A model generated the notes under the pieces. The model was given only the letters and a program-made list of their open reading frames with translations. It was not told the origin of the DNA and did not search any database. A DNA stretch of 64,000 bases from Macrostomum lignano (lineage: Eukaryota): NCBI GenBank assembly GCA_002269645.1, contig NIVC01002184.1, positions 62,001 to 126,000 of the forward strand, in the 5' to 3' direction. Made by a program: the position numbers and the translations under genes. Each line of letters starts with the position of its first letter. Position 1 is the stretch's first letter. This document shows, piece after piece, positions 26,190 through 60,307 of this stretch.

Positions 26190-28600
26190 TTAGATTACTG
26201 CACTCGATAAGCCAAGGATTATTGCTATTAATAAACCAAGGACTACTGCACTCGATAAACCAAGGACTATTGCTCTTGGCAAACCAAGGATTACTGCACT
26301 CAAGAAGCCAAGGATTATTGCTATTAATAAACCAAGGATTACTGCACTTGGAAAACCAAGGATTACTGCACTCGATAAACCAAGGACTATTGCTCTTGGC
26401 AAACCAAGGATTACTGCACTCAAGAAGCCAAGGATTATTGCACTTGGAAAACCAAGGATTACTGCACTCGATAAACCAAGGACTATTGCTCTTGGCAAAC
26501 CAAGGATTACTGCACTCAAGAAGCCAAGGATTATTGCTATTAATAAACCAAGGATTACTGCACTTGGAAAACCAAGGATTACTGCACTCGATAAACCAAG
26601 GACTATTGCTCTTGGCAAACCAAGGATTACTGCACTCAAGAAGCCAAGGATTATTGCACTTGGAAAACCAAGGATTACTGCACTCGATAAACCAAGGACT
26701 ATTGCACTTGATAAACCAAGGAATATTGCACTTGATAGGCCAAGGATTACTGCACTTGATAAACCAAGGATTATTGCACTTGATAGGCCAAAGATTACTG
26801 CGCTTGATAAACCAAGGATTATTGCACTTGATAAACAAAGGATTATTGCACTTGATAAACAAAGGATTATTGCACTTGATAAACAAAGGATTATTGCACT
26901 TGATAAACCAAGGATTATTGCACTTGATAAGCCAAGGATTATTGCACTTGATAAGCCATGGATTATTGCACTTGATAGTAAAGAATGTTGCACTTGATAA
27001 GCCAAGGATTAATGCACTGGATTATTCAAGGATTATTGATATTAATAAACCAAGGACTACTCCACTCGATAAACCAAGGATTATTGCTCTTAATAAACCA
27101 AGGATTACTGCACTTGGAAAACTAAGGATTACTGCACTCGATAAACCAAAGACTATTGCACTTGATAAACCAAGGATTATTGCACTTGATAGGCCAAGGA
27201 TTACTGCACTTGATAAACCAAGGATTATTGCACTTGATAGGCCAAAAATTACTGCGCTTGATAAACCAAGGATTATTGCACTTGATAAACCAAGGATTAT
27301 TGCACTTGATAAGCCAAGGATTATTGCACTTGATAAACCAATGATTATTGCAGTTGATAAGCCAAGGATTATTGCATCTGATAAACCAAAGATTATTGCA
27401 CTTGATAAACCAAGGATTATTGCACTTGATAAACAAAGGATTATTGCACTTGATAGGCCAAAGATTACTGCGCTTGATAAACCAAGGATTATTGCACTTG
27501 ATAAACCAAGGATTATTGCACTTGATAAGCCAAGGATTATTGCACTTGATAAACAAAGGATTATTGCAGTTGATAAGCCAAAAATTATTGCATCTGATAA
27601 ACCAAGGATTATTGCACTTGATAAACCAAGGATTATTGCACTTGATAAACCAAGGATTATTGCACTTGATAAACCAAGGATTATTGCTCTTGGCAAACCA
27701 AGGATTACTGCACTCGATAAGCCAAGGATTATTGCTCTTAATAAACCAAGGATTACTGCACTTGGAAAACTAAGGATTACTGCACTCGATAAACTAAGGA
27801 TTATTGCTCTTGGCAAACCAAGGATTATTGCACTTGATAGGCCAAGGATTACTGCACTTGATAAACCAAGGATTATTGCACTTGATAAACCAAGGATTAT
27901 TGCACTTGATAAGCCAAGGATTATTGCACTTGATAGGCCAAGGATTACTGCGCTTGATAAACCAAGGATTATTGCACTTGATAAACCAAGGATTATTGCA
28001 GTTGATAAGCCAAGGATTATTGCACTTGATAAACCAAGGATTATTACACTTGATAAACCAAGGATTATTGCACTTGATAAACCAAGGATTATTGCACTTG
28101 ATAGGCCAAGGATTACTGCACTTGATAAACCAAGGATTATTGCACTTGATAGGCCAAAGATTACTGCGCTTGATAAACCAAGGATTATTGCAGTTGATAA
28201 GCCAAGGATTATTGCACTTGATAAACCAAGGATTATTTCACTTGATAAACCAAGGATTATTGCACTTGATAAACAAATATTGCACTTGATAAACCAAGGA
28301 TTATTGCACCTGATAAGCCAAGGATTACTGCGCTAGATAAACCAAGGATTATTGCACTTAATAAACCAAGGATTATTGCACTTAATAAACCAAGGATTAT
28401 TGCACTTGATAAACCAAGGATTATTGCACTTGATAAACAAAGGATTATTGCACTTGATAAACCAAGGATTATTGCACTTTATAAGCCAAAGATTACTGCA
28501 CTTGATAAACCAAGGATTATTGCACTTGATAAACCAAGGATTATTGCACTTGATTAATCAAGGATTATTGCTATTAATAAACCAAGGATTATTGCACTAG
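26190..28600 (+). repeat. Minisatellite, 24-bp unit (CCAAGGATTATTGCACTTGATAAA), about 100 copies
   Basis: Periodicity read directly; the long LDKPRIIA / LINQGLLH ORFs are artefacts. Confidence 0.97.
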
Positions 28601-28789: not shown

Positions 28790-29510
28790 ATGCATGGGAT
28801 TCTTTCTATCCAGGGATGCTTGCTATTCAGGGATTCTTGCTATCTGCAGGATGCTTGCTATTTAGGGATTCTTGCTATCTGCAGGATGCTTGCTATCTGG
28901 GTGGATGCTTCTATAATATCTGGGGGTGCTTGCTATCTGTGTGGATGCTTCTATAATATCTGGGGGGTGCTTGCTATCTGTGTGGATGCTTCTATAATAT
29001 CTGGGGGGTGCTTGCTATCTGGGTGGATGCTTCTATAATATCTGGGGGGTGCTTGCTATCTGTGTGGATGCTTCTATAATATCTGGGGGGTGCTTGCTAT
29101 CTGGGTGGATGCTTCTATAATATCTGGGGGGTGCTTGCTATCTGGGTGGATGCTTCTATAATATCTGGGGGGTGCTTGCTATCTGGGTGGATGCTTCTAT
29201 AATATCTGGGGGGTGCTTGCTATCTGTGTGGATGCTTCTATAATATCTGGGGGGTGCTTGCTATCTGGGTGGATGCTTCTATAATATCTGGGGGGTGCTT
29301 GCTATCTGGGTGGATGCTTCTATAATATCTGGGGGGTGCTTGCTATCTGGGTGGATGCTTCTATAATATCTGGGGGGGTGCTTGCTATCTGCAGGATGCT
29401 TCTATAATATCTGGGGGTGCTTGCTAATCTGCAGATGCTTGCTATCTGTGGTGATTCTTGCTATGAGCATTAGAGGATGCTTGCTATCTGCGATTGTTCA
29501 CTTTTGGAGG
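28790..29510 (+). repeat. Minisatellite, 41-42-bp unit (GGGGTGCTTGCTATCTGGGTGGATGCTTCTATAATATCTGG)
   Basis: Periodicity read directly, degenerate at both ends. Confidence 0.93.
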
Positions 29511-34360: not shown

Positions 34361-36728
34361 CCACTTGTCTACGACAGAATTCCTTCCCCACATCTCTATC
34401 TTACCAAATGGCAAGCACTGCATGCCATAGACAATTTAGATCTGCGCTGTACACTTCGAATTCCAAAACAGTTGCTTTATTATGGACAGGCAAGAAAACA
34501 CTTTCTCAACAGGAGAAGTGACATCTTTGACTGGAGAATAGTCTATGGCCAACCTAGAAAAAAGGCAAGAGGGAGGGAATACAGGCATGAAAAGCTAACT
34601 GCAAGAATTTTTACTGGTGCCTCCTTAGCTCACCACCCCAACTTACCAAATCTACAATGCAAGCGGTCAGACAGCGACGGCAAGCAGCCAAGCAAGCCTT
34701 GCGAAACTTGGGCCTCGACAGCGAATCGAGCGATGAGTCGAGCGATGACTCATTTTTCACTGCCGAGAGCGAGGGAGAGGACGGTGACGAAAATCAAACA
34801 GGCAACGATGGACCGGAGGAAGACGATCAGGGAATGATGCACGATGATTGGAGATCAGTAACTCCAGAGACTGATGCTCGAGCTAATTCCCTTCCCGAGT
34901 TCCTCGGGGCAAGCGGAGTCAATCCGGGATTCTCCGTACCTGCTGATGTTGACGACGGCTGGACAGCCATTTTCGAGCAATTTTTACCCGATGAGTTGCT
35001 GCTTCAGATGTGCATGTGGACAAACAAGAGAGCGCAGCTGGATATTGCCAAGTTTCAAGAAGAACACGGAGATGATGAACTGCCTTACGGGCTCAGAACG
35101 TGGAAGCCCTGCACTGTTTCTGAGATGAAGAAGGTGATCGGCGTTATATTATATACCGGAGTTGTACAGAAACCGGAGGTGACGGCTTACTGGTCCACGG
35201 ACCCGTTTTACTTTCATCCCTACTTTCAAAGCATGAAGATGCTTCCTCGCTCGCGGTTTCAACAAATCATGTCATGGCTGCGTTGCGATGAATGTCTTGA
35301 CTTCGACGCTGGTGATCCCTTGTGCAAGATCAGGCCGTTCCTAGACATGGTCCAGACAGACAGTTTGCAAGAACAGCTACATGCCCGGTCAAAGCATTGC
35401 CGTTGATGAAGCGCTGCTGCTCTATAAAGGGAGGCTGATTTTTAAGCAGTACATGCCCAACAAGAGAGCCAAGTTTGGCATCAAATTGTACTGCCTTGCA
35501 GAGTCTTCTACAGGCTACATGTGGAACTATCTGATACATTCAACCACCATTGCGAATGAACAGTTCGGCAACGATGTGCCGCAGCTCTCAATCAGTGAGA
35601 GAGTCGTCGTTGAACTTTGTCGCGACATTCTGGACCTTGGATATCGGGTCTTTTGCGACAGTTGGTTTTCATCGGTGCGACTGGCCAAGTTCCTTCTGAC
35701 CAGAGGAACAACCTTAACTGGGACCGTTCGCAAAGACCGAGGCGTTCCACCGATTCTGCGAGATATGCTCTTGCAACCACCGAGTCATTCCTTTGCCCGA
35801 CATGGTGACATCCTTGCTGTGAAGCTGGTTGACAGGCGAAGCTCAGGAACAAAGACGGTCTATCTGTTGGACTCCGCTTCAACGCTGCTAGCTCTTTGGT
35901 TAGCCGGGTACTGCGCGGTGGTGTGGAGCAGCAGCTGCTGAAGCCCAACTCGGTTTTGCAATATAATCACAACATGGGAGGTGTGGATCGGATGGATGCC
36001 GCAGCCCAGCCTTACAGCGCATGCCGCCGAACGCACAAATGGTTCGTAAAGTTGGCGGTGTTCCTGCTACAGCAGCTGGTTCGCAACTCCTGGATTGTGT
36101 ACCGACATCTAGGTGGATCCATGAGCTTTCTCAGCTACACTGAAAGGTGTGTAAAGCACTTGATTGAAAGCAGCGGAAATGGTCGATCGAGAGTTAAGCG
36201 TCAGGCTCTTCCCCGTCAGCCAGGCGACATTCATCACCGGCTGGAAATGCTACCCGCTACCGCAGCACAAGAACGGCCTACCAAGCGTTGCCGAGTTTGT
36301 TACCAGCGCAGACTGAAAAAGCGGACCGTCTACTTCTGCCAAGGCTGTGACGGTCAGCCTGGGCTTTGCCTGGAGCCGTGCTTCTTTGAGTGGCACTCGG
36401 CTAACTGATTGCTGGCGCTTTGCTGAAACTGTAATCGAACTGTTGCTAAAATTATTTTCATTCACTTGCATGCAGCTTCATTTGCCCTTATGTTCTTAAG
36501 ATTTACCTTTGTGCATGCAATGTATGTCGTTTTCTATTTGTTTTGTGACACTCCGACGCAGTATGACAATACAAACAGTTTTTTGGCCTTGGCATGCATA
36601 GCATTCCATTTGGTTGAGTCAGACAATGATTCTGTCTAAACTCGCTTTCCCATCGACTTCAAATCTGTCTATGGTCAATTGACAGAATGAACGATGGCAT
36701 GCACAGCATGCCACTGGTAATCATAAGG
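34361..36728 (+). mobile_element. piggyBac DNA transposon (PGBD4-like), boundaries approximate
   Basis: TTAA at 34357-34360 and 36729-36732; imperfect subterminal inverted match (TTACCAAATGGCAAGCACTGCATGCCAT vs TTACCAGTGGCATGCTGTGCATGCCAT); encloses the transposase. Confidence 0.75.
34657..36408 (+). pseudogene. piggyBac transposase with two frameshifts
   Basis: DDD triad (AVDEALL, FCDSWFSS, MGGVDRMD) and C-terminal Cys-rich domain (CRVC...FCQGCDGQPGLCLEPCF). A 4-bp ACAG duplication near 35358 and a 1-bp deletion near 35877 split it into three ORFs. Confidence 0.92.
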
Positions 36729-39614
36729 TTAAGGAGGTTTAGCTGAGTAATGAGGTTTCATTAGGGTTGTCGACCCAGGAGAGCTCGACTTCGTCAGATT
36801 TTCATCCATCTCTAACCTGCAATCAATTATTTTCGGACAGGGGCAGGAAGAGAGAAAAGTATTGAGTTTTTGCGCTATACTCAGAACTTTTTCCTTTAGA
36901 GAGCGCAGCTGATTAATTATACCTTCGTACTCTGGAGTTTTGGTCCCCGTTGCACCTGCATCCCTGTCGGAGATTCGGAATATCCTCACTGACTGCACAA
37001 AGAGCTAAGCTACAGGTTTGAATGAGTCAGCTAGCAGTTGTAAATGGATTTAATTCTGAACTGTTTTCCCCGAGAACTCCAATTTTTCACGACCCAAATT
37101 TGTCCACCTGGCAGAACCCCACTCTCAGCACTATGCTTTCTGAGCCAAGGACCCCTGGAAGTAAGTGGAAGCTACGAAAATACGTTCCTTGAGCTCGTTT
37201 CTAAGAAAATTGAGAGTATAGTTTCCTTTTACTTCAGTTGTCCATATCATGAGCTCCAATTCGCAAGGCCTTAAAATGACAAAGTCGGGGCCGCTGTACA
37301 CCCAGTATGAGCAGGGATTCGTGCGTGCTCTCAGGGTCAGAGGAATGGTCATTGGGACTCGCCTGAAGCGCCCTTGACAACTAACAACCATATACATTCC
37401 AGCGCGACTGTCACAGTGAATCAACTCAGTTCGCCATCTAACAGGGATGAGAAGCTCTCGCGAGCACAATGCTGATGCTTCTTCTTCCACAAAGAGTGGC
37501 AGCAGCATGCATCCGCGTATAGTCATTATTTGAAAATCGAACTCTTGCTTTGTTTGTGTCTGTCAAATCTCATTTTTTATGACACTTTCTTCTCTTTACT
37601 CGTACTAAAGCTCATAACTCTTAAAACAAAAAAGCAAAAGCTTTAAGACTTTTGGAGAGAGAAGCATGCAATGTCGGAAGTAAGCCGATAGTTGTAGCTT
37701 TGAGACAGCCAGCACTCACAGTGAGTGACGCCCTGAAATGACGAGAGCAGATTGCGTGAATTCTCATGCCTATAGGCTACACCTACATCCCCTCAGTTCA
37801 TTCTGCTATCCGTTCTTTGAGAATTTGAGAATTTTGAGAAAGACGCTACAAACTCATAGGCTAAATTGCTAACGCAGACTGGCAATCCAGTAAAGTTTAT
37901 AGTTGCTCCCATCTCTTTAGATTTTCTAGACTGAAATCGTTTGTCCATGACAAAACTGTTGCCATGGTCCTGACCGAACCGCGGCCGGGGAGAGCCGCTG
38001 AATCCATCGTCGGCCGCCAAAGCGGTACCCGAATTGAATTATGAATCAAGAACTGAACTTGATTGAACTTTTGAACTTTTGACATGCGATCCGGAATCCC
38101 ATGAATCCCATGTAGGGGGGGTGGTGTTGTGGCGAGTGCGCACTGTGCCGAGGGTTTTTTTAAAGTACGCTATGTGTCGCTCCGGCTCACTCATTCTCGG
38201 TCAGCTCACTCAAGTCGAGTTAATGCCTGATGGAGCGGGCGGCGCAGGAATTCTTTCTTCACAGAAAAAAGCGCAGGAAAGCTTGAAGGAGTCGACGTGA
38301 GGAACAGCTAACTGCACAAAATATCCCATTTTCTGGGCAAATCTGAGACCGCTCGACCCGCGGCAATAATTCCATCTTGTTGCGCCTACCAGAGCGTATC
38401 TAATTAGCTTCTCAGGTATGTCACCAGCAGGAATATTTCACACTTGGCTGCCAGATTATAATAGGAGCAGTGCGTGAGGAGCTAAAAATCTGGCTGAAAA
38501 ATTCACGCCAACAAAATCAGTCGTCGAGCTGAATAGCGATTTCATTAGTCATTCACAGCAATTGCACGTCGCTTTCCTGGTCTAGAGAGGAAAGTTTGTC
38601 ATTAATTTTACATTGAATAATGTTACGTCAAACGTTGGCGTAACGTAAAAACAACCTTCTTTTTCCAGAAACTTCGACCGATACCCGGTACGTTGACGAA
38701 ACGCCCGAGTGTTGCACGGGTCTGCAGGGGGTGAAGAGTCTTGGCCAAAATTGAGCAGTAATCAGCAACTGCCATACAGGATCATAGGCTTTCTCGCCCA
38801 ACGACAATGCAATAAAGTTAAACGTAATCCACAGGGAAATTCTACGAATTTTAGTGGATGAATTTTTCATCGAATCCCTTGGCTGTGCATGTTTGAGCTG
38901 GATTGCAATTTTTAAGAACAAGAAATTGTCGGTGCTTCAGAGCATCCCTGTGCGTGCCCGGGAGTCGGCAAAATTGGCACACTGTTGCGTTAATGCGAAA
39001 TGTTTTTGAACGCCAAAAAGAAAGACGCAGCACTCGCAATTCTTGCTAATTTCACTCTGTGCAGGCCGCGCCACAACCGGCGAGAGGTATTACTACCCAT
39101 TCCGCCGACTCCCTGAGCAGGAACACAAGCGCGCGGATGCGTACGCAGTCATATGCACAGCTCAGGCACACACACAGGAGTGTACAGCGACCCTTCACTA
39201 TACCTTGGGGGTTGGTCCTCACCTCAAGGTCGTTAATTGCACGAGCAGAACCAAGCCGAAATTCCAATATAGCCCCAAATTTGGAATCAAGCCTGGACCG
39301 CTGGCTCATTGCTACAGACGCCTAATAGCGAGATGGAAGCTTTAAGTTTTCGACACAAAATTCATATCTCTATACTGATGGACTTCAGAAATTAGGATTC
39401 TCTTATACGAGTTGGCCAAGTCTCGCATGTCTGCTTTATTTGAAACTAAGGTGATACAGAGCCAAAACTGTACACCTGCCTATCTCGCTAATGCAGTTAT
39501 TAGCACAACTTGCGAGCGCAGCAGCCTTCCACTCCAGCTGTTCGTGAATGAGCAAAACCACTGGCCTCCTTGCGCATGGTTGCGGATCAGCTCTTACCCT
39601 AATTTGCTTCAAAT

Positions 39615-40384
39615 AGTAGGAAAATAAACGTCAACAAAAACATAAAATAAAATTTTCTTTCTAGCCAACGCGTTTCGTCAAACACGAGACGTCGTCAGGG
39701 CAAATTCAATTAACCTTAATTTACAACACCAATATATTTAAGCAAAACAAACTGTACAGTCCAAAGGCGGGTCCAAACACGAGACGTCGTCAGGGCAAAT
39801 TCAATTAACCTTAATTCACAACACCAATATATTTAAGCAAAACAAACTGTACAGTCCAAAGGCGGGTCCAAACACGAGACGTCGTCAGGGCAAATTCAAT
39901 TAACCTTAATTCACAACACCAATATATTTAAGCAAAACAAACTGTACAGTCCAAAGGCGGGTCCAAACACGAGACGTCGTCAGGGCAAATTCAATTAACC
40001 TTAATTCACAACACCAATATATTTAAGCAAAACAAACTGTACAGTCCAAAGGCGGGTCCAAACACGAGACGTCGTCAGGGCAAATTCAATTAACCTTAAT
40101 TCACAACACCAATATATTTAAGCAAAACAAACTGTACAGTCCAAAGGCGGGTCCAAACACGAGACGTCGTCAGGGCAAATTCAATTAACCTTAATTCACA
40201 ACACCAATATATTTAAGCAAAACAAACTGTACAGTCCAAAGGCGGGTCCAAACACGAGACGTCGTCAGGGCAAATTCAATTAACCTTAATTCACAACACC
40301 AATATATTTAAGCAAAACAAACGAAACGCGTTGGCTAGAAAGAAAATTTTATATTATGTTTTTGTTGACGTTTATTTTCCTACT
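39615..40384 (-). mobile_element. Penelope-like (pLTR-derived) non-autonomous element: 6.75 x 95-bp tandem units flanked by 64-bp inverted repeats
   Basis: Units start at 39680, 39775, 39870, 39965, 40060, 40155 and 40250 (last truncated at 40320). 39615-39678 is the reverse complement of 40321-40384 with one mismatch. A hammerhead motif sits at the left junction. Confidence 0.75.
39664..39701 (-). ncRNA. Minimal type I hammerhead ribozyme candidate
   Basis: The minus strand reads GCC-CUGACGA-C-GUC-UCGUGUUU-GAC-GAAA-CGCGU-U-GGC: core boxes, 3-bp stem II, palindromic ACGCGU stem III, GUU cleavage triplet and GCC/GGC stem I. Confidence 0.6.
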
Positions 40385-41129
40385 GTTTGTTAGTCGAGCT
40401 ACACTTCCACTAATTTGCTTCATTTCATCATGAACTGTACCACTAGCCAAGCCTGATAGCATCTGTAAGCCTAACCTAAAGGACATTATTTCGGTTGTAT
40501 TACTATTTTTAACACTTGGCCTGCATCGTAGTAGCATCAGCCTGAATCAGTCGGCATATTGCATCCCCGTGGATAGCGCACGGCTACAGGTAGATGGCAG
40601 AGTGCGTGAGGAAGCGGGCCTGATTGGGAGATGGCGAAGAGTGTCGGATAGGCAGTATCCTGCTCCCTCATCTCTGCAGGTGCTCCAATCTTCTCGGATC
40701 TGCCGCGCCTGGAAACAGACCCGCATATTTCATCTCCTCCTCATCACCTCGCTTTGAATGCGAAAAGAGAAGAATTCGGCAACACTGACAGAACAGCCTC
40801 TCTCGGGGGCCTGAATATTAGGCTTCAAAAGATGTCTATTTTTGACTCCACTGAGGAAGCATGCTGTTAGGTCAAGGCATTCCCTTGCTGCCAACTACAC
40901 CCCGTCAGATGAGGAATCCGGAATGAAACAGTGTCAGGACTTCATTTCTCAATTTTATAACAACGTGCGGAATGTACTTGATAAAAGAGTAGACTAAAGA
41001 AAATTCAATTTACTGGTTTGATTGATTGATTGACTAAAATAAATCAATCCGTTTACTAACTTATTGGAAGGCGAGCAGGGGATGAACTCCAGCTTCAATA
41101 TTTCTGAAATACTCGGTGGCACAACAATC

Positions 41130-41826
41130 ACTACCCACTAGGCACTAGCACCCAAATCGCCTCCCACTATTAGCACCCAATTCATTACCCACTAGCACCC
41201 AAATCGCTTCTTACCAGCACCCAAATCGCTACCCACTAGTAGCACCCAATTCATTACCCACTAGCACCCAAATCGCTACCCACTAGTTAGCACCCAAATC
41301 GCTACCCACTAGCACCCAAATCACAGCCCCTATAGCACCTAAGTCACTGCTCAAGCACCGATGTCACAGCCCCTATAGCACCTAAGTCACTGCTCAAGCG
41401 CCGATGTCACAGCCCCTATAGCACCTAAGTCACTGCTCAAGCGCCGATGTCACAGCCCCTATAGCACCTAAGTCACTGCTCAAGCGCCGATGTCACAGCC
41501 CCTATAGCACCTAAGTCACTGCTCAAGCACCGATGTCACAGCCCCTATAGCACCTAAGTCACTGCTCAAGCACCGATGTCACAGCCCCTATAGCACCTAA
41601 GTCACTGCTCAAGCACCGATGTCACAGCCCCTATAGCACCTAAGTCACTGCTCAAGCGCCGATGTCACAGCCCCTATAGCACCTAAGTCACTGCTCAAGC
41701 ACTGATGTCACAGCCCCTATAGCACCTAAGTCACTGCTCAAGCACCGATGTCACAGCCCCTATAGCACCTAAGTCACTGCTCAAGCACCGATGTCACAGC
41801 CCCTATGGCACCTAAATCACTGCTCC
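41130..41826 (+). repeat. Composite array: about 22-bp units (41130-41320) then a 43-bp unit x about 11.7 (41322-41826)
   Basis: 43-bp unit CACAGCCCCTATAGCACCTAAGTCACTGCTCAAGCACCGATGT read directly; both arrays share a TAGCACC core. Confidence 0.93.
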
Positions 41827-42308
41827 AAAGCGTCAAAAGCTTTAATAAGGCCATGGGACATTCGCTATTGACGGGATTAGGATAAGACTAGCTTAGATTT
41901 TAGATATCTTTAGGGATTGAATTGGCCAACACGAATAGAGCCCCGGCCGCAGTTGGCAATTAATGCATGCACAAAACGGGCTCAATCAGTGTGGGCAGTT
42001 AAGCGTACGTGTAGTGCAAGCTCTTAATTAAATTTTCTACACATAAAATACGATCGCCAGACGAGATAACGAATAAAAAATGCAATATGACAGTCTCGAT
42101 CGTGTCCGCGATTGAGTTCCAGAAAGTCAAAGATTCACCGATCATACATTTATACTCGGAAGTAGTCACATGACACAGCTCTCGCATATGCAGTATATCG
42201 CATATTTTGCGTTGCACTTAAGCTTACGGAAGATGAGGCCAGCAACGCTAGCTATGAAACTGTACCAGATGGAATTGGTGGCGGACAACAACGTAGACCG
42301 TGGTCAGG

Positions 42309-42550
42309 ATGAGCGATGAAAAGCACAGCCTCGTCATCGACGCCCTAGACAGGGGTGAGCGGCCGGTCGACGTTGCCCGATGGTTCCAGGTCAACATTAA
42401 GACTGTTTTGTCAACCCGAAGGCGATACGAAGTTACTGGACGCCGTCATCGATTCCCCCAAGGCCAAGGCGTCGGCCGAGTACCAAAACTTGCAGTTGCC
42501 CATATGCAGCACCTCGTTGACAAAATCAACGCTAACCTAGCTCAGATGAA
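42309..42550 (+). pseudogene. Tc1/mariner-like transposase N-terminal HTH fragment
   Basis: MSDEKHSLVIDALDRGERPVDVARWFQVNIKTVLSTRRRYEVTG...GRVPKL resembles the paired-type HTH and GRPxK linker; no DDE domain follows. Confidence 0.55.
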
Positions 42551-43270
42551 AAACCTGCTGAAAAACGTTTTGCTCATGTCCATGTTTTGCTCATTTTGGC
42601 TCATTGCCAGAACTGTGTTGCAGCTGCTGTTGTTTATTTTCCCACTCTGTTATGGCCAACCAAGCGCCTGCCTATGTTCCCTCATTTGCTCATACTTTGC
42701 TCATTTGCTCATATGTTGCTCGTATTGACCTATTAAAATTATACCCTTGCCACAACACCACCCACTGGGCGGCCGATTGAAAGCTTTTCAAACTGCGATA
42801 GAGCATGAATGGATTAAGTCTGTGCCCCAAGGCTAAAGTAAATTGCCCACTAGCCACCAGTAGAATAGAATCTACTAATAGAATAGAATAGAGACCATAG
42901 AATCGATCGGCAGCTGCCCTTGCCAGTGTAATTCTGCCACTTAGGATTAAGTAATTTGCCTGTAAGCTTAAGTGCAACGTTTTCTGAACAGTGAGTGACA
43001 CAGTCGTGCACGCTGTGTACACTTAGCTTGACGTTCAATTACCTAAGCTAGCTACCGCCCCTGATTCTGCCTTTTGACCACTGGACAAGAATTGTGTACA
43101 TTTGGTTTAACTTTCAATCTCAATCTATAATTCTCTCTCCTACCTACTATACCTATGTATGTTGTCAAGCCAAGTTGTAATCAATTGTTTTCAATCTTAC
43201 CCTCCTTACCTGTGTACGTTGCAAAAACCAATATTTAATCAATCGCTTTCAATCTCAATTTCTCAAATCG

Positions 43271-43328
43271 TTCTAATAAAATCCTGACGATGCACCATGG
43301 CGTGCGAAACGCGTTGAAGTTGTTAGAA
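43271..43328 (+). ncRNA. Type I hammerhead ribozyme candidate (Penelope/retrozyme type)
   Basis: CUGACGA 43284-43290, extra U, stem II GCAC/GUGC, GAAA 43306-43309, palindromic ACGCGU stem III, GUU triplet. Stem I has 11 bp (UUCUAAUAA/UUGUUAGAA plus UC/GA) around a 2x2 internal loop. Confidence 0.7.
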
Positions 43329-46300
43329 ATTGCAATCATATTCAAATGTTGATATTAAGCTTTCTATTTATTCTCAACGCAAAATGCTACATATAGTTTT
43401 TATAATGCACTGATACCAAATAAAGAATTCCGTTGTCTATGGCAGCGGAGATAAGCTACTGATAATCTACTCAAGTTTTTAACACTAGGGAATAGACAAT
43501 GGATAAATAATCAGCGGTCTCAGTACGTGACAACGAATCGTCTGGCGAGCGCCAAAGACAATTCGTTGTCACGTGCTGTGACCGTTGATTCTTTGCATTG
43601 TTTTTCTGTTTGACGATCCTACAGACAATGCATTGTTTGTAGTAATGGATTGTTCTGCTTTAAAATGTGAATAATGATCGTCAAATTGCTAAACAATGTA
43701 TTGTGGCTTAATGTTCGCCACTAGCCTGGGAACACTGGTGACATTGTTCTGCATAAAATGTGCGAACAATGATCGTCAAATTGGTAAACAATGCGAACAG
43801 GCACAATGAATTACATTAGAATAATTACAATTTAACCAGGAGATACTCTAGGCATAAACACCGAGGCATTGTTTAGGACATCGCGTTGGACTCCAGTTCG
43901 AATGCCTTACGAGCTAGATGAAGCTTAGAGAAAGCTTGCAGAAGAAGAACTGCAGGAAACGGCTGCTAAAAGTACAAATGCAAACCAGAATCTGCTTGGC
44001 GCAAAGTCGCGGGGTTCATCGGGGACGACCGCGGGGAGGGGGGGGGGCAACTCTGCGGGGATTACATAGCTCGTAATTCTGATGAAGAGTCCCGGCTGCA
44101 TTTGCTGAGCAAATTTGCCGCGTGCTGTCTGCGATCTGTCCGTCTTATCGGAGCAAATGCGAGCTCTGGCTGCTGTTTCCGCTCCGCGCAGATGCGCGCC
44201 CTGTGGAATATCGATAATTGCAAATGGATGCTGATGAGAGTTTTACACACACAGCCAGCTATATTGTGGACATTTCATTATTTCAGTCTCAATCTAGCCG
44301 CTAAGATAAAAAAATTTTTCTGGCTAAATAAGACATGCAGATTTCAATCCGCCTACTGTTATGAGCATATATAGCAGCTCTCTTATAGTTGCCACAAAAC
44401 AACAGACATACCACATGCAGCTATGAACTGAAACCTGATTCCATCTCAGATTTTACTCCCTTGACAGCAACGTTTGGAACAACGGCTTCGGATGAGGCCG
44501 AGCCAGCGAGGTCAGGCAGATGGAAGTGGACTCGACTTTCGAGACACATCCGGAGACAATGGTGCTGTGACGCTTCTGCTGGGAAAGCGACAGCGCTATA
44601 TACGAGCTACTCGTATCGTTCTAGAGCAGTGATGGTGTCCGGCTGACACGAGCAATATCCTCTGCAGGTTGGAGTGATTCGTGATTCATCATCCGGGGCC
44701 ACCTGCTTCACCCAACCTGTGTCTGACCATCGGTGTGCGTATGTACCACTTTGACCGACTGTCGGGCTTCCACTGGCGATTAACGGTCAGAAACAGTGCA
44801 TCGTGGAAATTCTTTTGGAAGACGTGACATATAATTGCGACACAGAGACAAACAATGCAGCGAATATGACCTTCTGTATAAAACGCCTTCACAACCTTCG
44901 ATATTGATGTTTAGATTCATTCTGAAAATACCAGGATATCCAGACCGATTGTAACAGCTGACTATTAAAGGGCTTATAAGTGCAATGAATATCAGGCTGA
45001 TATATACATCCATCGTGCATTTTCTATACCTCGGTTAGTAGACCTAGCTGAATGTCTATTAAACCAAACCCAGCATTCATCTTCAATGAAGAGTTTAAGA
45101 GTGGTGATCAGCAGTCACTCAAAAACTCCCACTTCCTAGACACTGGGGAACAAGTGCCCTATAGGTATGTGCAAAATCAAAACATCTCTTACTGTAGTGG
45201 ATCCTTAGTAGCTAGCTCTTGACTTCTTGTTTCGGCGGCGGTGAGGTGTTGCCTCTGTGAGTCGTTGACTTTATCTGTGCATGGGTCGACCAAAAGCGAG
45301 AGCGAATCAGAACTTGACGGTCCTCGAGCTCGGAATTAACAATAGAACGTGCGCCCACAATTGTAATTCTCTAAATATCTGTAATAGGACCTATATTTGT
45401 CCTCCTGAAGGGCGTTTTCTTCGCTGCGTCCGAAATGTAACGGATAACTCAAATCAAATCATTAAATCCTCTAGGACCCAAGGAAATAGGAGGCCTTTCT
45501 CAAATGTGTCGACAATAAACGGCTCTCGTATACTCAATTAATCATCTTATTAACACTAACAATCAAAGAACTGAATCCGGTAAACATGCACTTACCAAAA
45601 ATTGGACAGTGTGGTCCCTCAGCGATTAGTCTTCTTTGTTCCTTCAGAGTCAATTCTTAGAGACCGCTCTGAGTCTGAATTTTTACTCGGATTTTCACTT
45701 ATTCTTATAGCAAAATTTTGGGGCAAAAACAGTTTGGGATCGGATATTTACAATTAGGTCATTTATGTTTGATTAGGCTGTCATGTATGTGAGCACCTAC
45801 ATGGGGTTTAAGTAAATACAGCTGGTTGAAAACCGGTTCCTTAATCAAACAAATGTTCTGAATCACTCTGTTTGCGCATGATTCCTAAAAATAGATAAGA
45901 CCCGGCCATTCTAGAATTATTCGAGTACTTTAAGTAGGGCTTTACGGTATGTATCCCTCTACATCAAGATGATTCCATCTTGGACTCAGCATTATTGTCC
46001 CTGTAAATCAAATCCGCAACGAATCCGCAGCCTTCGTGGCCTCAGAAATAACATATAAACGGGGATAACTTATTCAGCGCAAATAACTTATGCTAGAGAT
46101 CTAGCATACTGAGTTTTCACAATTGAAAGTGTCGGTATTTAAAACAAAGATAACCAGTTTGACATGCAAGTATATATTTTTCAATAGCTCAATGCGATAA
46201 AAAAAATTTGTTTTAAAATCCAATTGAAAGATACATTTGCGATTTTGGTTTTATTGCAGACTTTTCTAGAAAACTTCCCTAGAAAAATCGAACTTTGTAA

Positions 46301-47208: not shown

Positions 47209-49947
47209 GGGTGCAGCCAAAATCGTCATATTTAAAATCATCATATGATGATGACAACTTGAACAAATCTCGAAGACTCGAAGACTTAAACATTTAAATA
47301 TGACGACTTTGACCAAAGGCAAGGGTGTATGAATTTAGGATTTTCCTACCTTCAGGCAAAAATCCCTTGCATATGCACCCATAATTTTCTCTTGCTTGCT
47401 CCGACAGCCGGGTTCTCAAGTCTAATAAATCTAATAAAACTATAAAATAAAACTAAGTCTAAAGTGCACAAAACTAATAAATAAATTTGAACTATTCGAA
47501 CGCAAAAGGAAAAAGACAAGAAAAAGAAAAAGGAAAAGGGGGTTGAAAATTAGGCGGCACATCAAGGCAGTATAAATATTAAAAAAGGAGGTTACTTACT
47601 TACTTACTACTGACGGGGGGCGCAGGCGCCGCGAATAGGCCGCGAGGCCCCTATCGCAACCCCAAGGTAAAAGAGCACAAGGATTAGCCTTGGGGGTGCG
47701 CCCAGTCCCCGCCAGTAGTCGGCAGGTCCGCAGTGGAGGCATCGGCGACCCTCATCCGGCCGGAGTCCCGGACGAAGGCGCGGAGGTCTCGGATATTGTC
47801 CGCGGTGGTCAGCTCGTCCATCCGCTGGGGGTGGCCGAGGTATTTGTGCCGCGCCTTGTTGAAGTAAGGGCAGAAGGTGACGTGATGCTCCGCGGTCTCC
47901 TCTCCTATGCCACAGAAGGGACAGGTGGGAGGGCAACCGGTTTGCAACGATATATGTCTCTGGAAGAATCCGTGGCCGGTTAGGACCATGCACATCTCCC
48001 TGAGGTCGGTTCTGTTAAGCGAAATCAGATAATCAGAGACTTTCCTGTTCAGGTTAGGCATGGCAGAGCGGCTCTGCCTGTACTCGGTGCAGCTGTTCCA
48101 GTGGAGCTGGTGCTGCTGATGGAGCCACCTGTTGATATGGCGGGTGACTTGCGACCTGGGGGTGGGTAGCCTCATCAGACGGTGGTTGCCGTCTGGGTTG
48201 CTGCCCTCCTTGGCGAGAGAGTCCGCGAGCTCGTTGCCCAGGATGTTGCTGTGACCAGGTGTCCAGATAATTCTAATCCTGTTAAGGACTGAGAGAGATT
48301 GCACACTGCGGTGGCATTGAGATACTGTAGCAGCGGAGATATTCTCAGTGGTTAAGGCCTTAATAGCAGCTTGGCTATCAGTGTAGAAATTAATGTCAAA
48401 ATTATTAATGTTCGCCTGAAACAGTTGCTGGGCACACTGCTCAATGGCGCAAATTTCAGCTTGGAAAACTGAGGTGTTCTCACCGAGGTGCAGACTTTCC
48501 TGGAGAAGCATCTTACCCTCGTGGAAAATGGCAATACCCGCTCCAGCGCGGCCGTTGAACAGCGAGCCGTCGGTGAAGCAGTGAATGCCCTGGCTGCGCC
48601 GGTTCACACCGACATCCAGCGGAATGTTGTCTCGGCCAGGGATGGCGGTCTTGAAGCCCCTCCTGATGTTGAGGGCGGGAGGTCGACTATCCACATTGCC
48701 CAGGTCCATGTGGATGTTGTTAAGGTCGCGGCGGACAAAGTCCATATGCGGGATTAATGTTTTCATTGGCATAAAGCCAGAGGGCGCGTTATTTAACGTT
48801 TTATCTCTGATAAGCCGGGAGGCAGACTTCATAGCCTCCGCCCTAATAAATAGGTGAAGCGGAGGTAGGTTAAGGATAGTGTTCAGCCCCTCGTAAGGGG
48901 TGGACGGGTACGCACCTGTGATGGCACGGCAAATGCTGCCCTGAAGCTGGTACAGCCGCTGACGGGCGGCCTTCTGCTCCAGCACGCTAGTCCAGATGAG
49001 ACTCGCGTATGTGATACTGGGCCGGATGATGCCGGTATAAATCCAACGGACCGTTCTAGGCGAGAGGCCCCAAGTCGGCCCGATGGCTCTGCGCAGCTGG
49101 GCAAAGCAGCGTTTTGCCCGACCGATGACGTTATCAAGGTGCTTCGTCCAGCGCAGGTCATGCGTTAGCGTCACACCGAGGTATTTGACCTCCTTCTTGA
49201 AGGGGATGTTTCTGCCATAGACAGTGAGGTTTTTCATCTCCCACTTACGGCGCTTGGTGAAAACGACAGCGACAGTCTTAGTGACGCTGATTTTTAGGCC
49301 ATGCTGTGTAGCCCAGTCGGCCGCCTTGTCGGCGAATTGCTGCATCAGGTTGCGCAGAGTGGCGGGGTCGGGTCCGCTGACGACCGAAAAAAGGAGGTTA
49401 CACTCAACGGGTGGGGGTGCCGCTAGACACACTACTGGACCAAAAATCCCATGCGTGGAGACTACCGATAGAACGGCTCACAAACATGCAAGCAACAAAA
49501 TTAAAACAAAAGTTTTGACCAAGATTCCAGTGGGGGGAAACTACTTTTCCAACCAAAGGAAGAACAGAACAATTTCTGGAACCTCCAGTCAATGGAAATG
49601 TGACAAAAATTGAACAATGAGCGGACAAAAATTAAACATTTGTAGCAGTTTTCCTTTTAAATAAGTTATTAAAGTAATGAATGGTACGTTCAAATATCAA
49701 TTAAGTGGCACCCGACTGCCACACATGACTACTGAGAATACACTGTAAATTGTTTTAATTTGTTAGAGCAAACAAGAACATGCTGCCGCCATGAGCTAAG
49801 ATCCTTGCGCAGCCAATGCAACACAATATGACGATTTAGTGAATGCAGCATTGTCTAATACTAAGATGATGACGATTTAGATAATTTAGTTGTTTTTCTC
49901 GTAAGCCGCAGATGACAATCTCGAATATGACGACTTCGGCCGGAACC
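47209..49947. mobile_element. Mutator-like non-autonomous element interrupted by a LINE
   Basis: 24-bp imperfect TIRs (GGGTGCAGCCAAAATCGTCATATT vs GGTTCCGGCCGAAGTCGTCATATT), repeated subterminal ATGACGA motifs, 9-bp TSD TATATATTT (47200-47208) / TATATATTC (49948-49956). Confidence 0.7.
47596..49386 (-). mobile_element. 5'-truncated non-LTR retrotransposon with RNase H (LOA/R1/I-group like)
   Basis: Open ORF with the end of RT (VKYLGVTL), RNase H ([42 protein letters not shown]) and a CCHC knuckle (CPFC...[10 protein letters not shown]). (TAAG)n tail; 15-bp TSD AAAAAAGGAGGTTAC at 47581-47595 and 49387-49401. Confidence 0.92.
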
Positions 49948-59400: not shown

Positions 59401-60307
59401 CATCTCCCCCCAGTGCCCCCACATTTCTCAATCACATCCCCCATACACATCTCTCACCCACATCTCCCCCGCATCTCTCCCACACATCTCTCATCTCTCA
59501 CCCACATCTCCCCCGCATCTCTCCCACACATCTCTCATCTCTCACCCACATCTCCCCCGCATCTCTCCCACACATCTCTCATCTCTCACCCACATCTCCC
59601 CCGCATCTCTCCCACACATCTCTCATCTCTCACCTACATCTCCCCCGCATCTCTCCCACACATCTCTCATCTCTCACCCACATCTCCCCCCAGTGCCCCC
59701 ACATTTCTCAATCACATCCCCCACACACATCTCTCACCCACATCTCCCCCAGTGCCCCCACATTTCTCAATCACATCCCCCACACATCTCCCCACATCTC
59801 TCACCCACATCTCTCCCACACATCTCTCACCCACATCTCCCCCCCACATTTCTCAATCACATCCCCCACACATCAACCCCACATCTCCTGCCACACATCT
59901 CGCCCACATCTCCCCCCCCGCATCTCTCCCACACATCTCTCACCCACATCTGTCAGCCACATCTCTCATATATTATTATCTCTTTTCCCTCAATTTCCCT
60001 CTCAGCTCTTTTCTCTTATCTGCAAAGCAATAAACCCTTAAGGACACACAGAAAGCCATAAGCTGTAGCAATGATCCCCTGCCCGCAGCCGATATCTACT
60101 CTGGCCAGATCACTGCTATAATCGGGCCCAACGGTTCGGGCAAGTCAACGCTGATTCGCCTGCTGGCTGGCGACGAGCTGCCAACCAGCGGCTCGGCCTC
60201 CGTCTCCGGGATCTGCGTGACCGACCCCATCCAGCGGCTGCACGCTGCCGGCCGCATCGGCGTGTGCTATCAGGTAGCTGCCAGTAGTAGTAGTTGTTGT
60301 TTGTTTT

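What the first reader, a model, noticed from the sequence alone, without database searches (positions are those of the whole stretch)
39615..40384. Hammerhead-terminated 95-bp tandem array bracketed by 64-bp inverted repeats (candidate Penelope/retrozyme-type non-autonomous system)
Seen in the sequence: 6.75 almost identical 95-bp units (one visible variant base) are enclosed by inverted repeats with a single mismatch. On the minus strand each unit carries the 5' half of a hammerhead (GCC-CUGACGA-C-GUC), but only the terminal unit joins GAC-GAAA-CGCGU-U-GGC to complete it. The far end holds an inverted copy of the ribozyme's 3' half plus tail, joined by AC microhomology, and TTTG(G)AC recurs at the internal unit junctions. 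Established knowledge: Penelope-like elements and retrozymes carry minimal type I hammerheads with palindromic stem III that cleave as dimers, and PLE insertions often show tandem partial pLTRs with an inverted copy. Inference: this is a recent RT template-jump product in which the repeated unit is a split ribozyme. It may be an undescribed non-autonomous family and a route by which this genome generates tandem arrays.
Basis: partly seen in the sequence, partly recalled or inferred. Interest (0 to 1): 0.8.

Follow-up and report, generated by a model that had tools for sequence, protein, structure and literature searches.

The report
Hammerhead-bearing Penelope-type retroelement insertion
This stretch of a flatworm (Macrostomum lignano) genome is a small, truncated copy of a Penelope-type retroelement that carries a minimal hammerhead ribozyme and an internal 95-bp repeat array, so it is a clear example of a known kind and not a new system.

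Summary
There are 6.8 near-identical 95-bp units (39679-40322) between 69-nt inverted arms (39610-39678 / 40321-40389). On the minus strand only the terminal unit completes a hammerhead core.

Rfam finds no hammerhead. The motif nevertheless shows every published hallmark of Penelope-like-element (PLE) minimal hammerheads: an extra nucleotide between A9 and G10.1, a G10.1-C11.1 pair, and a palindromic ACGCGU helix III. A second, independent copy lies at 43273-43326(+) with a covarying helix II. A strict descriptor expects 0.001 hits per shuffled window; two were observed.

I also found an exact 13-bp target-site duplication (39599-39611 / 40410-40422). A 20-nt extension is present at one end only. 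The overall layout (head-to-head inverted truncated copy, one-sided tail, variable-length duplication) is the documented PLE insertion layout.

It is not a retrozyme, because internal units lack G12-H17. "Split ribozyme" has no functional support. No reverse transcriptase (RT) plus GIY-YIG endonuclease ORF and no further family copy lie in the window.

How the array arose is unresolved. The inverted copy's truncation point and the repeat boundary fall on the same phosphodiester (39678|39679), which hints at an RT pause or switch site.

Verdict: new member of a known kind, of moderate interest.

The parts
39599..39611 (+). Left copy of the 13-bp target-site duplication, CTAATTTGCTTCA
   Evidence: Exact 13-mer present only here and at 40410-40422 in 64 kb. 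It abuts the element's 3' end.
39612..39678 (-). 3'-terminal segment of the direct copy: A11.2-C11.1, G12-A14, palindromic helix III, U17 cleavage site, the 3' strand of helix I (GGC) and a 55-nt AT-rich tail
   Evidence: Sequence reading. It is the left arm of inverted repeat I1.
39664..39701 (-). Complete minimal type I hammerhead (HHR1): GCC CUGACGA C GUC/GAC GAAA CGCG U U|GGC. The predicted cut is between 39667 and 39666.
   Evidence: Descriptor scans. A covariance model built from unrelated min-HHRs scores it 27.3 bits, E about 1e-5. Rfam is negative.
39679..40322 (-). Array of 6.8 units of 95 bp. Each unit carries the 5' strand of helix I, CUGACGA and the helix II hairpin, but not G12-H17. 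The 5'-most unit on the minus strand is partial (72-74 nt).
   Evidence: TRF, the repeat finder, unit comparison.
40321..40389 (+). Inverted, 5'-truncated copy of the element's last 67-69 nt (hammerhead 3' half plus tail), joined to the array through 2-nt AC/GT microhomology
   Evidence: Inverted repeat I1, 97% complementary; alignment.
40390..40409 (+). 20-nt extension (TTAGTCGAGCTACACTTCCA) present only at this end. It is a candidate PLE 'tail', meaning the sequence between two RT start sites.
   Evidence: It lies between the right arm and the right target-site duplication. One-sided tails are described in PMC8557442, PMC3846280 and PMC11167929.
40410..40422 (+). Right copy of the 13-bp target-site duplication
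43273..43326 (+). Second, independent minimal hammerhead (HHR2): CUAAUAAAAUC CUGACGA U GCAC-CAUGGC-GUGC GAAA CGCG U U|GAAGUUGUUAG. The predicted cut is between 43315 and 43316. It belongs to a different element family.
   Evidence: The covariance model scores it 29.2 bits, E about 3e-6. There is no significant similarity to HHR1 outside the core.

Best explanation
The locus is a dead, heavily 5'-truncated insertion made by Penelope-like-element (PLE) machinery in Macrostomum lignano. It derives from the hammerhead-bearing 3' (pseudo-LTR, pLTR) region of a PLE or of a PLE-dependent non-autonomous element.

Inferred sequence of events:
1. The element's RT/GIY-YIG endonuclease complex cut both strands of the target with a 13-bp stagger.
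2. Both 3' ends primed reverse transcription at the element's internal start sites, which lie 20 nt apart. This explains why the tail extension is at one end only.
3. One cDNA ran through the tail, the hammerhead and about 640 nt of upstream sequence.
4. The other cDNA stopped after 67-69 nt, inside the 3' strand of hammerhead helix II.
5. The two were joined head-to-head at a 2-nt microhomology.

The 95-nt repeat existed at or before insertion. Its junction lies at the same nucleotide where the inverted copy stops. I therefore favour RT pausing and template switching at that site, in this event or in the source lineage, with about 0.45 confidence for that step. Later DNA-level changes in copy number are possible.

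The hammerhead is a PLE-type minimal ribozyme that needs a partner for its palindromic helix III. With a single complete copy here, and with its 3' half able to pair with the inverted arm in a read-through transcript, it is probably inactive at this locus. It is probably a relic of the source element's RNA processing.

What is shown: the anatomy, the motif features, the second copy and the host species. What is inferred: the order of events, the RT pausing and the lack of activity.
For: Motif. Both window hammerheads have the four published non-descriptor hallmarks of PLE min-HHRs (PMC4209133): a nucleotide between A9 and 10.1, G10.1-C11.1, palindromic 15.2-16.2, and a short helix I. Helix II covaries between them (GUC/GAC versus GCAC/GUGC).

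Statistics. The strict descriptor gives 2 hits against 0.001 expected. A covariance model trained on 14 unrelated metagenomic min-HHRs finds exactly these two sites, at E about 3e-6 and 1e-5, with the next best hit above E 1.7. That HHR class shows strong covariation: 53 double-change cells against 19.6 in shuffles, 0 of 500 shuffles as high.

Anatomy. The 13-bp target-site duplication, the inverted 5'-truncated copy and the one-sided 20-nt extension match the PLE layout described in PMC8557442 and PMC3846280. PLE protein cleaves and extends both strands and starts RT at two adjacent internal sites downstream of the hammerhead (PMC11167929).

Independent parallel. Metagenome locus L119 has a head-to-head pair of 172-nt arms, each carrying the same type of hammerhead. 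Each arm ends 67 nt past the cleavage site. The window element ends 55 nt past the site, or 75 nt with the extension.

Host. A LINE ORF in the window is 95-100% identical to many M. lignano proteins. PLEs of the Perere-10 clade are known in flatworms.

Array timing. The 5'-most unit is partial and abuts the inverted arm, so at least one tandem junction predates or accompanies insertion. The IR ends at 39678 and the array starts at 39679.
Against: No RT or GIY-YIG ORF lies in or near the element. The only RT in the window is a LINE with RNase H.

No other copy of the unit or arm is in the window. A family-specific pattern found nothing in the metagenome collection. A repeat family is therefore not demonstrated.

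Rfam hammerhead models do not score the motif, even at E<=10.

Helix II has only 3 bp and helix I only 3 contiguous bp. The monomer minimum-free-energy fold is not the hammerhead fold.

The tail extension is 20 nt, whereas the literature describes 30-40 nt.

The tandem units are sub-pLTR fragments that lack the 3' terminus. This is not the usual whole-unit partial tandem of PLEs.

The arms differ at 2 of 69 positions while the array has 1 variant in 644 nt (binomial p about 0.08). This could mean the array was homogenised after insertion.
Confidence: 0.72

Rival explanations
1. The array arose at the DNA level. The 95-bp repeat arose by replication slippage or unequal exchange, like the many other minisatellites of this genome. 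This happened either in the source element before transcription or at this locus after insertion. The second case also needs a later deletion at the unstable head-to-head junction. RT template switching played no part.
For: The window holds 73 TRF rows, about 25 distinct arrays, several at 96-98% identity. Simple and tandem repeats make up 15% of the M. lignano genome (PMC5730564). The arms are more diverged (2/69) than the array (1/644), and the only variant is in an edge unit, as expected under homogenisation.
Against: The partial first unit abutting the inverted arm means in-situ slippage alone cannot create the first junction. The exact coincidence of the repeat boundary with the truncation point of the inverted copy (39678|39679) would be chance, roughly 3% within +/-2 nt. 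The other arrays in the window have much shorter periods, mostly 12-49 bp.
Confidence: 0.4
2. The element is a member of a dedicated non-autonomous family, SINE-like or retrozyme-like, of about 162 nt (the 95-nt body plus the 67-nt hammerhead 3' half and tail). It is mobilised in trans by a PLE. On this reading it is not a truncated autonomous PLE.
For: pLTR sequences alone suffice for PLE-mediated integration in trans (PMC3846280). Animal retrozymes are reported to derive from PLE pLTRs (bioRxiv 10.64898/2026.07.22.740005). The unit's 5' end, GACCCGCC, is a fixed point reused six times.
Against: No second copy is available. Internal units lack a complete ribozyme, so the defining retrozyme cycle of cleavage to monomers followed by circularisation cannot run on this array. 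A 5'-truncated autonomous PLE predicts the same local sequence.
Confidence: 0.3
3. The structure is a non-autonomous DNA transposon (MITE-like) with 69-bp terminal inverted repeats and an internal satellite. The hammerhead-like motif is coincidental.
For: Long, nearly perfect inverted termini bracket a tandem array. piggyBac and Tc1/mariner-like fragments lie nearby.
Against: The flanking duplication is 13 bp, longer than for known cut-and-paste superfamilies (my knowledge). It is separated from the right arm by 20 nt. The arm itself contains the 3' half of a hammerhead whose full form has all PLE min-HHR hallmarks and recurs independently 3.6 kb away.
Confidence: 0.05
4. The unit number or the inverted arrangement is an assembly artefact.
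For: PLE tandem and inverted structures and M. lignano repeats are known to trouble assemblies (PMC8557442; PMC5730564).
Against: The whole structure is only about 810 bp, with unique flanks and an exact duplication on both sides. This is well within single long reads.
Confidence: 0.04

Closest known systems
Minimal type I hammerheads of Penelope-like elements (min-HHR; Cervera & de la Pena 2014, PMC4209133)
   Same: CUGANGA...GAAA...UH core. An unpaired nucleotide between A9 and G10.1. The G10.1-C11.1 pair. A palindromic helix III (ACGCGU) implying action as a dimer. A short helix I. Occurrence of paired motifs on opposite strands 100-700 bp apart.
   Different: Helix II here has 3-4 bp, against 6-8 bp in the Schistosoma and Drosophila families. 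Only one complete copy is present at the locus. Activity was not tested.
PLE insertion architecture (pLTR partial tandems, inverted 5'-truncated copy, one-sided 30-40-bp tail, variable target-site duplication; PMC8557442, PMC3846280, PMC11167929)
   Same: A head-to-head inverted truncated copy, a microhomology junction, an extension at one end only, a duplication of non-fixed length (13 bp), and the hammerhead 55-75 nt upstream of the insertion's 3' end.
   Different: There is no ORF. The extension is 20 nt. The tandem repeat is a 95-nt internal sub-fragment that excludes the element's 3' terminus, not whole units.
Metazoan non-LTR retrozymes (Cervera & de la Pena 2020, PMC7229834)
   Same: An AT-rich tandem array associated with a type I hammerhead, and probable dependence on PLE machinery.
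   Different: Retrozyme monomers are about 150-450 bp, and each carries a complete, usually canonical, hammerhead, so transcripts self-cleave and circularise. Here the units are 95 bp and lack G12-H17.
Head-to-head hammerhead pair in metagenome locus L119 (probably animal host DNA)
   Same: The same hammerhead class (U insert, G-C, GAAACGCGUU). An inverted head-to-head pair. Arms end 67 nt past the cleavage site.
   Different: Both L119 arms are complete, at 172 nt each with a full ribozyme. There is no internal tandem array.

Membership tests
PLE-type minimal hammerhead (min-HHR) | Catalytic core C3-U4-G5-A6-N7-G8-A9 ... G12-A13-A14 ... A15.1/U16.1-H17 | tested here: met
   HHR1 39701-39664(-) and HHR2 43273-43326(+) both carry CUGACGA, GAAA and U16.1-U17.
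PLE-type minimal hammerhead (min-HHR) | Extra unpaired nucleotide between A9 and 10.1, and a G10.1-C11.1 pair | tested here: met
   C (HHR1) or U (HHR2), followed by G...C closing helix II. These hallmarks are listed in PMC4209133.
PLE-type minimal hammerhead (min-HHR) | Palindromic 15.2-16.2 / helix III allowing dimer formation | tested here: met
   ACGCGU in both copies. The dimer itself was not demonstrated. Cofold minimum-free-energy structures favour other pairings.
PLE-type minimal hammerhead (min-HHR) | Helices I and II maintained by covariation within genome families | tested here: inconclusive
   Only two copies are in hand. Helix II covaries between them (GUC/GAC versus GCAC/GUGC), and helix I differs but still pairs. 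The wider class with the same core shows strong covariation in metagenomic members. Those members were selected for pairing, but 14+ were observed against about 0.3 expected among 122 pattern hits.
PLE-type minimal hammerhead (min-HHR) | Self-cleavage, typically weak, dimeric or protein-assisted | not testable with these tools
   Needs in vitro transcription of monomer and dimer constructs.
Rfam hammerhead families (type I / III / HH9 / HH10 / II models) | Score at or above the family gathering threshold | tested here: not met
   No hit at gathering score or at E<=10 on the 1.2-kb region. As I understand these models, they expect a hairpin helix III, which min-HHRs lack.
Penelope-like element (autonomous) | Single ORF with a telomerase-like RT and a GIY-YIG endonuclease between pLTRs | tested here: not met
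   The element has no ORF. The Pfam scan of window ORFs found piggyBac, LINE RNase H and Nup192, but no GIY-YIG or PLE RT. Not every short ORF was scanned.
PLE-made insertion (pLTR-derived, any autonomy) | Inverted 5'-truncated copy adjacent to the direct copy, forming flanking inverted repeats | tested here: met
   Arms 39610-39678 / 40321-40389.
PLE-made insertion (pLTR-derived, any autonomy) | Short extension ('tail') present at one end only | tested here: met
   20 nt at 40390-40409, between the right arm and the duplication, with none at the left end. The length is shorter than the 30-40 bp quoted in the literature.
PLE-made insertion (pLTR-derived, any autonomy) | Target-site duplication of variable length | tested here: met
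   Exact 13-bp repeat, with only two occurrences in the window. No empty site is available to prove duplication.
PLE-made insertion (pLTR-derived, any autonomy) | Multiple genomic copies sharing the pLTR with an autonomous PLE of the same genome | not testable with these tools
   The M. lignano genome is not in the searchable DNA collections. The window holds no other copy and the metagenome scan was empty.
Metazoan non-LTR retrozyme | Tandem monomers (~150-450 bp), each containing a complete type I hammerhead | tested here: not met
   The units are 95 bp and end within helix II. Only the terminal unit is completed by unique sequence. The criterion is from PMC7229834.
TIR DNA transposon / MITE | Fixed-length target-site duplication directly flanking both terminal inverted repeats | tested here: not met
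   The right arm is separated from the flanking repeat by 20 nt, and the repeat is 13 bp.

The most novel reading that the evidence does not exclude
The PLE reverse transcriptase repeatedly re-copied a 95-nt sub-segment. It switched from the RNA's 5' end (GACCCGCC, possibly with a cap-templated G) back to one fixed site inside hammerhead helix II. That is the same site where the opposite-strand cDNA stalled. On this reading a ribozyme-structured RNA acts as a template-switch hot spot, and PLE activity can seed satellite-like arrays de novo in a genome that is 15% tandem repeats.
Probability: 0.2. Interest if true: 0.65.

Novelty: new member of a known kind. Interest (0 to 1): 0.38.

Why it matters
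The locus is a compact example of the Penelope-type insertion layout, about 810 bp long and readable to the nucleotide. It shows the target duplication, the one-sided tail, the head-to-head truncated copy and the minimal hammerhead together. It comes from a flatworm model species for which I found no report of hammerheads and only incidental mentions of Penelope-like elements.

It also shows that Rfam-based annotation misses this ribozyme class entirely.

The one feature that is not routine is that the repeat boundary and the truncation point of the inverted copy fall on the same phosphodiester inside helix II. If this recurs in other copies, it would give a testable link between hammerhead RNA structure, PLE reverse-transcriptase pausing or switching, and the birth of tandem arrays.

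Tried and rejected
- Rfam at gathering score and at E<=10 gave no hammerhead. It gave only a weak snoRNA-like chance hit, E 0.64, at 40358-40436.
- A sensitive BLAST of the unit plus tail and of both flanks against the rest of the window found no other copy.
- Removing the element and one duplication copy gives a 99-codon stop-to-stop frame across the site on the minus strand. This is too short to call a restored gene, and I did not pursue it.
- The Nup192-like ORF used to identify the host found nothing in the protein database. Against the PDB it matched human and Xenopus NUP205.
- A family-specific pattern in the metagenome collection gave 0 hits. A generic pattern in viral contigs gave one hit, which lacks helix II pairing (2 bp) and helix I pairing (0 bp), so I treat it as chance.
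- I looked for PLE ORFs next to metagenomic min-HHRs. None were found, and the L009 ORF is not a PLE.
- I looked for an inverted partner, a tail homology or a tandem array around HHR2. Local alignments were not significant, and TRF found nothing at score 30. Only weak 58-79-bp-spaced partial repeats are present.
- Relaxed hammerhead descriptors, including the U3-A8 core variant and hairpin helix III, found nothing further in the window.
- 'Split ribozyme' was rejected on connectivity grounds.
- 'Retrozyme' was rejected on unit content.

Full report
**What is there.** The 95-bp array is real. Tandem Repeats Finder gives 39679-40322, period 95, 6.8 copies, 99% matches and no indels. A unit-by-unit comparison shows six identical units and one variant base, 39722, in the unit next to the left arm. 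The array lies between inverted arms 39610-39678 and 40321-40389, which are 69 nt long and 97% complementary. The arms mismatch at 39614/40385 and 39646/40353. The arm sequence occurs nowhere else in the window. A sensitive BLAST of the unit plus tail finds no other copy.

An exact 13-mer, CTAATTTGCTTCA, flanks the structure at 39599-39611 and 40410-40422. These are its only occurrences in 64 kb. On the left it abuts the arm. On the right it is separated from the arm by 20 nt, at 40390-40409. The unit bounded by this repeat is therefore 39612-40409. Read on the minus strand it consists of:
- the 20-nt extension;
- an inverted copy of the last 67-69 nt of the element;
- a partial unit of 72-74 nt;
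- five full units;
- a last unit that continues into unique sequence holding the hammerhead 3' half and a 55-nt tail.

**The hammerhead.** The minus strand at 39701-39664 reads GCC CUGACGA C GUC-UCGUGUUU-GAC GAAA CGCG U U|GGC. Rfam does not detect it at gathering score or at E<=10 on the 1.2-kb region.

- The deviations from a canonical hammerhead are exactly those published for minimal hammerheads of Penelope-like elements (PLEs). These are a nucleotide between A9 and G10.1, a conserved G10.1-C11.1 pair, a palindromic 15.2-16.2 / helix III so that two copies must pair, and a short helix I (Cervera & de la Pena 2014, PMC4209133).
- My descriptor scan found a second motif at 43273-43326(+): CUAAUAAAAUC CUGACGA U GCAC-CAUGGC-GUGC GAAA CGCG U U|GAAGUUGUUAG. 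It has the same inserted pyrimidine, the same G-C pair and the same GAAACGCGUU. Its helix II is different but still pairs. Its helix I has 2 bp, a 2x2 internal loop, then 7 bp.
- Outside the core the two loci are not significantly similar. They are independent elements that share a ribozyme design.
- A strict descriptor yields these two hits against a mean of 0.001 per dinucleotide-shuffled window, with 1 of 1000 shuffles giving any hit. The descriptor was framed after seeing the first motif, so the second hit is the independent test.
- GAAACGCGT occurs three times against 0.2 expected.

- Among 122 matches, at least 14 distinct sequences have 4 or more contiguous helix II pairs and 3 or more helix I pairs. 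About 0.3 would be expected if the unconstrained positions were random.
- These sit on AT-rich, ORF-poor, transposon-littered contigs that look like animal DNA.
- On their alignment, 87% of cells pair and 53 cells change on both sides, against 19.6 in shuffles (0 of 500 shuffles as high). Slid controls drop to 29-43% paired. The sequences were selected for pairing, so the enrichment count is the cleaner statistic.
- A covariance model built from those 14 sequences alone finds exactly two sites in the window. They are 43277-43322(+) at 29.2 bits, E about 3e-6, and 39660-39705(-) at 27.3 bits, E about 1e-5. The next best hit is above E 1.7. The E-values are rough.
- One locus, L119, shows the same overall layout. 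Two 172-nt arms, 98% complementary and 3 nt apart, each carry a complete hammerhead of this type. Each arm ends 67 nt beyond the cleavage site.

**Host.** The window is eukaryotic. It holds a frameshifted piggyBac transposase, a LINE fragment with RNase H and a Nup205-like ORF. The LINE ORF is 95-100% identical to many UniRef proteins of Macrostomum lignano. That genome is reported as more than half repetitive, with 15% simple and tandem repeats (PMC5730564). This fits the 73 TRF rows in this window. I found no paper linking Macrostomum with hammerheads and none describing PLEs in it. PLEs of the Perere-10 clade are known in other flatworms (PMC3846280).

**What it is.** Published descriptions of PLE insertions list the following:
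- strong 5' truncation;
- partial tandems;
- an inverted 5'-truncated copy at the 5' end that creates flanking inverted repeats;
- a short tail extension, often at only one end;
- target duplications of variable length, for example 8-10 bp (PMC8557442; PMC3846280).

Biochemistry of an Anolis PLE shows that the protein cleaves and extends both target strands. It also shows that reverse transcription starts at two adjacent internal sites downstream of the hammerhead, with the tail being the sequence between them (PMC11167929).

The locus fits point by point. It has a 13-bp duplication, a head-to-head inverted truncated copy joined by 2-nt microhomology, and a 20-nt extension at one end only. Its hammerhead lies 55 nt (75 nt with the extension) upstream of the insertion's 3' end. 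I therefore read it as a dead, 5'-truncated product of PLE-type target-primed reverse transcription from a hammerhead-bearing pLTR-type RNA.

It is not an autonomous PLE, because there is no RT or GIY-YIG ORF in or near it. Whether the source was an autonomous PLE or a dedicated non-autonomous family cannot be decided from one copy.

**What it is not.**
- Metazoan retrozymes are tandem monomers of about 150-450 bp, each with a complete hammerhead that cuts the transcript into circularisable units (PMC7229834). Here the 95-nt units end inside helix II and lack G12-A14, helix III, the cleavage site and the 3' strand of helix I. The array cannot run that cycle.
- 'Split ribozyme' is only a description of truncated copies.
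- A TIR transposon reading fails because the flanking repeat is 13 bp and is not adjacent to the right arm.

**Activity at this locus.** Monomer minimum-free-energy folds do not adopt the hammerhead fold. In a read-through minus-strand transcript, 84 of the 90 nt covering the hammerhead and tail pair with the inverted arm. Only one complete copy is present, and the design requires a dimer. The ribozyme is therefore probably silent here. This is an inference. PLE min-HHRs are in any case weak or protein-assisted in vitro.

**Origin of the array.** Two observations constrain it.

1. The 5'-most unit is partial and is fused directly to the inverted arm. A single truncated unit could not have been duplicated in place. 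At least one GUGUUUG|GACCC junction existed at or before insertion, unless a later deletion trimmed the junction.
2. The inverted repeat ends at 39678 and the array begins at 39679. The point where the opposite-strand cDNA stopped and the 3' boundary of the repeated segment are therefore the same phosphodiester, between A11.2 and G11.3 of helix II, with a 2-nt microhomology ambiguity. By chance this is roughly a 3% event. It suggests a preferred reverse-transcriptase pause or switch site.

Two points weigh against an RT origin. This genome makes tandem arrays everywhere. The arms are more diverged (2/69) than the array (1/644; p about 0.08). That difference is also expected if the array was homogenised later, or if the two arms were copied from different RNAs. 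I put RT switching, here or in the source lineage, at about 0.45, a DNA-level origin at about 0.4, and leave the question open.

**Verdict.** The Penelope-type reading is supported. The retrozyme, split-ribozyme and array-generator claims are not. The locus is a new, unannotated member of a known kind. The one curiosity worth following genome-wide is the coincident breakpoints in helix II.

Noticed in passing
window 43273-43326 (+): A second PLE-type minimal hammerhead lies 3.6 kb from the finding, on the opposite strand. It belongs to an unrelated element. Upstream (43014-43262) there are only weak partial direct repeats spaced 58-135 bp, possibly a decayed array. TRF finds nothing there.
   Followed up: partly
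window 34657-36408 (+): A piggyBac-type transposase (DDE_Tnp_1_7 plus a C-terminal zinc finger) is split over three consecutive ORFs by frameshifts. It is probably a decaying copy.
   Followed up: partly
window 47684-49432 (-): A 5'-truncated LINE ORF (RT C-terminus, RNase H, zinc finger). It is 95-100% identical over parts of its length to dozens of M. lignano UniRef entries named as host proteins (E3 ligase, thioredoxin, amino-acid transporter and others). This suggests that transposon fragments are fused into many gene models of that annotation.
   Followed up: partly
window 12688-13554 (+): An uninterrupted 288-aa ORF matches Nup192/NUP205 (Pfam E 8e-31; human and Xenopus NUP205 E about 4e-20). 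It is GC-rich and lies among minisatellites. It found no homologue in the word-indexed 5.8-billion protein search. It could be an unusually long exon or a processed copy.
   Followed up: partly
window 1-64000, e.g. 1300-3957, 26193-28598, 61912-63996: Minisatellite density is extreme: 73 TRF rows, with arrays of 12-49-bp units reaching 100-220 copies. Several young arrays are 96-98% identical (28876-29431, 41321-41825, 59448-59690).
   Followed up: no
window 42300-42728 (+): A 142-aa ORF whose N-terminus looks like the helix-turn-helix of a Tc1/mariner-type transposase (by eye). It had no Pfam hit at E<=0.01.
   Followed up: partly
window 43505-43594 and 43592-43797: A 39-nt-arm near-palindrome, followed by a cluster of inverted and direct repeats (GATCGTCAAATTG...AACAATG). 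One direct pair is spaced exactly 95 bp apart (43666 / 43761). No link to the 95-bp array was found.
   Followed up: no
window 40358-40436 (-): A weak C/D-box snoRNA-like match (plasmodium_snoR30, 23.8 bits against a gathering score of 43, E 0.64) overlaps the right arm, the extension and the target duplication. It is most likely chance in AT-rich sequence.
   Followed up: no
L119 5868-6214 (metagenome contig Ga... locus): A near-perfect 172-nt head-to-head palindrome with a minimal hammerhead in each arm, nested inside further inverted repeats (5752-5838 / 6349-6436). Many similar hammerheads come from a small set of related metagenome samples and probably represent animal host DNA.
   Followed up: partly
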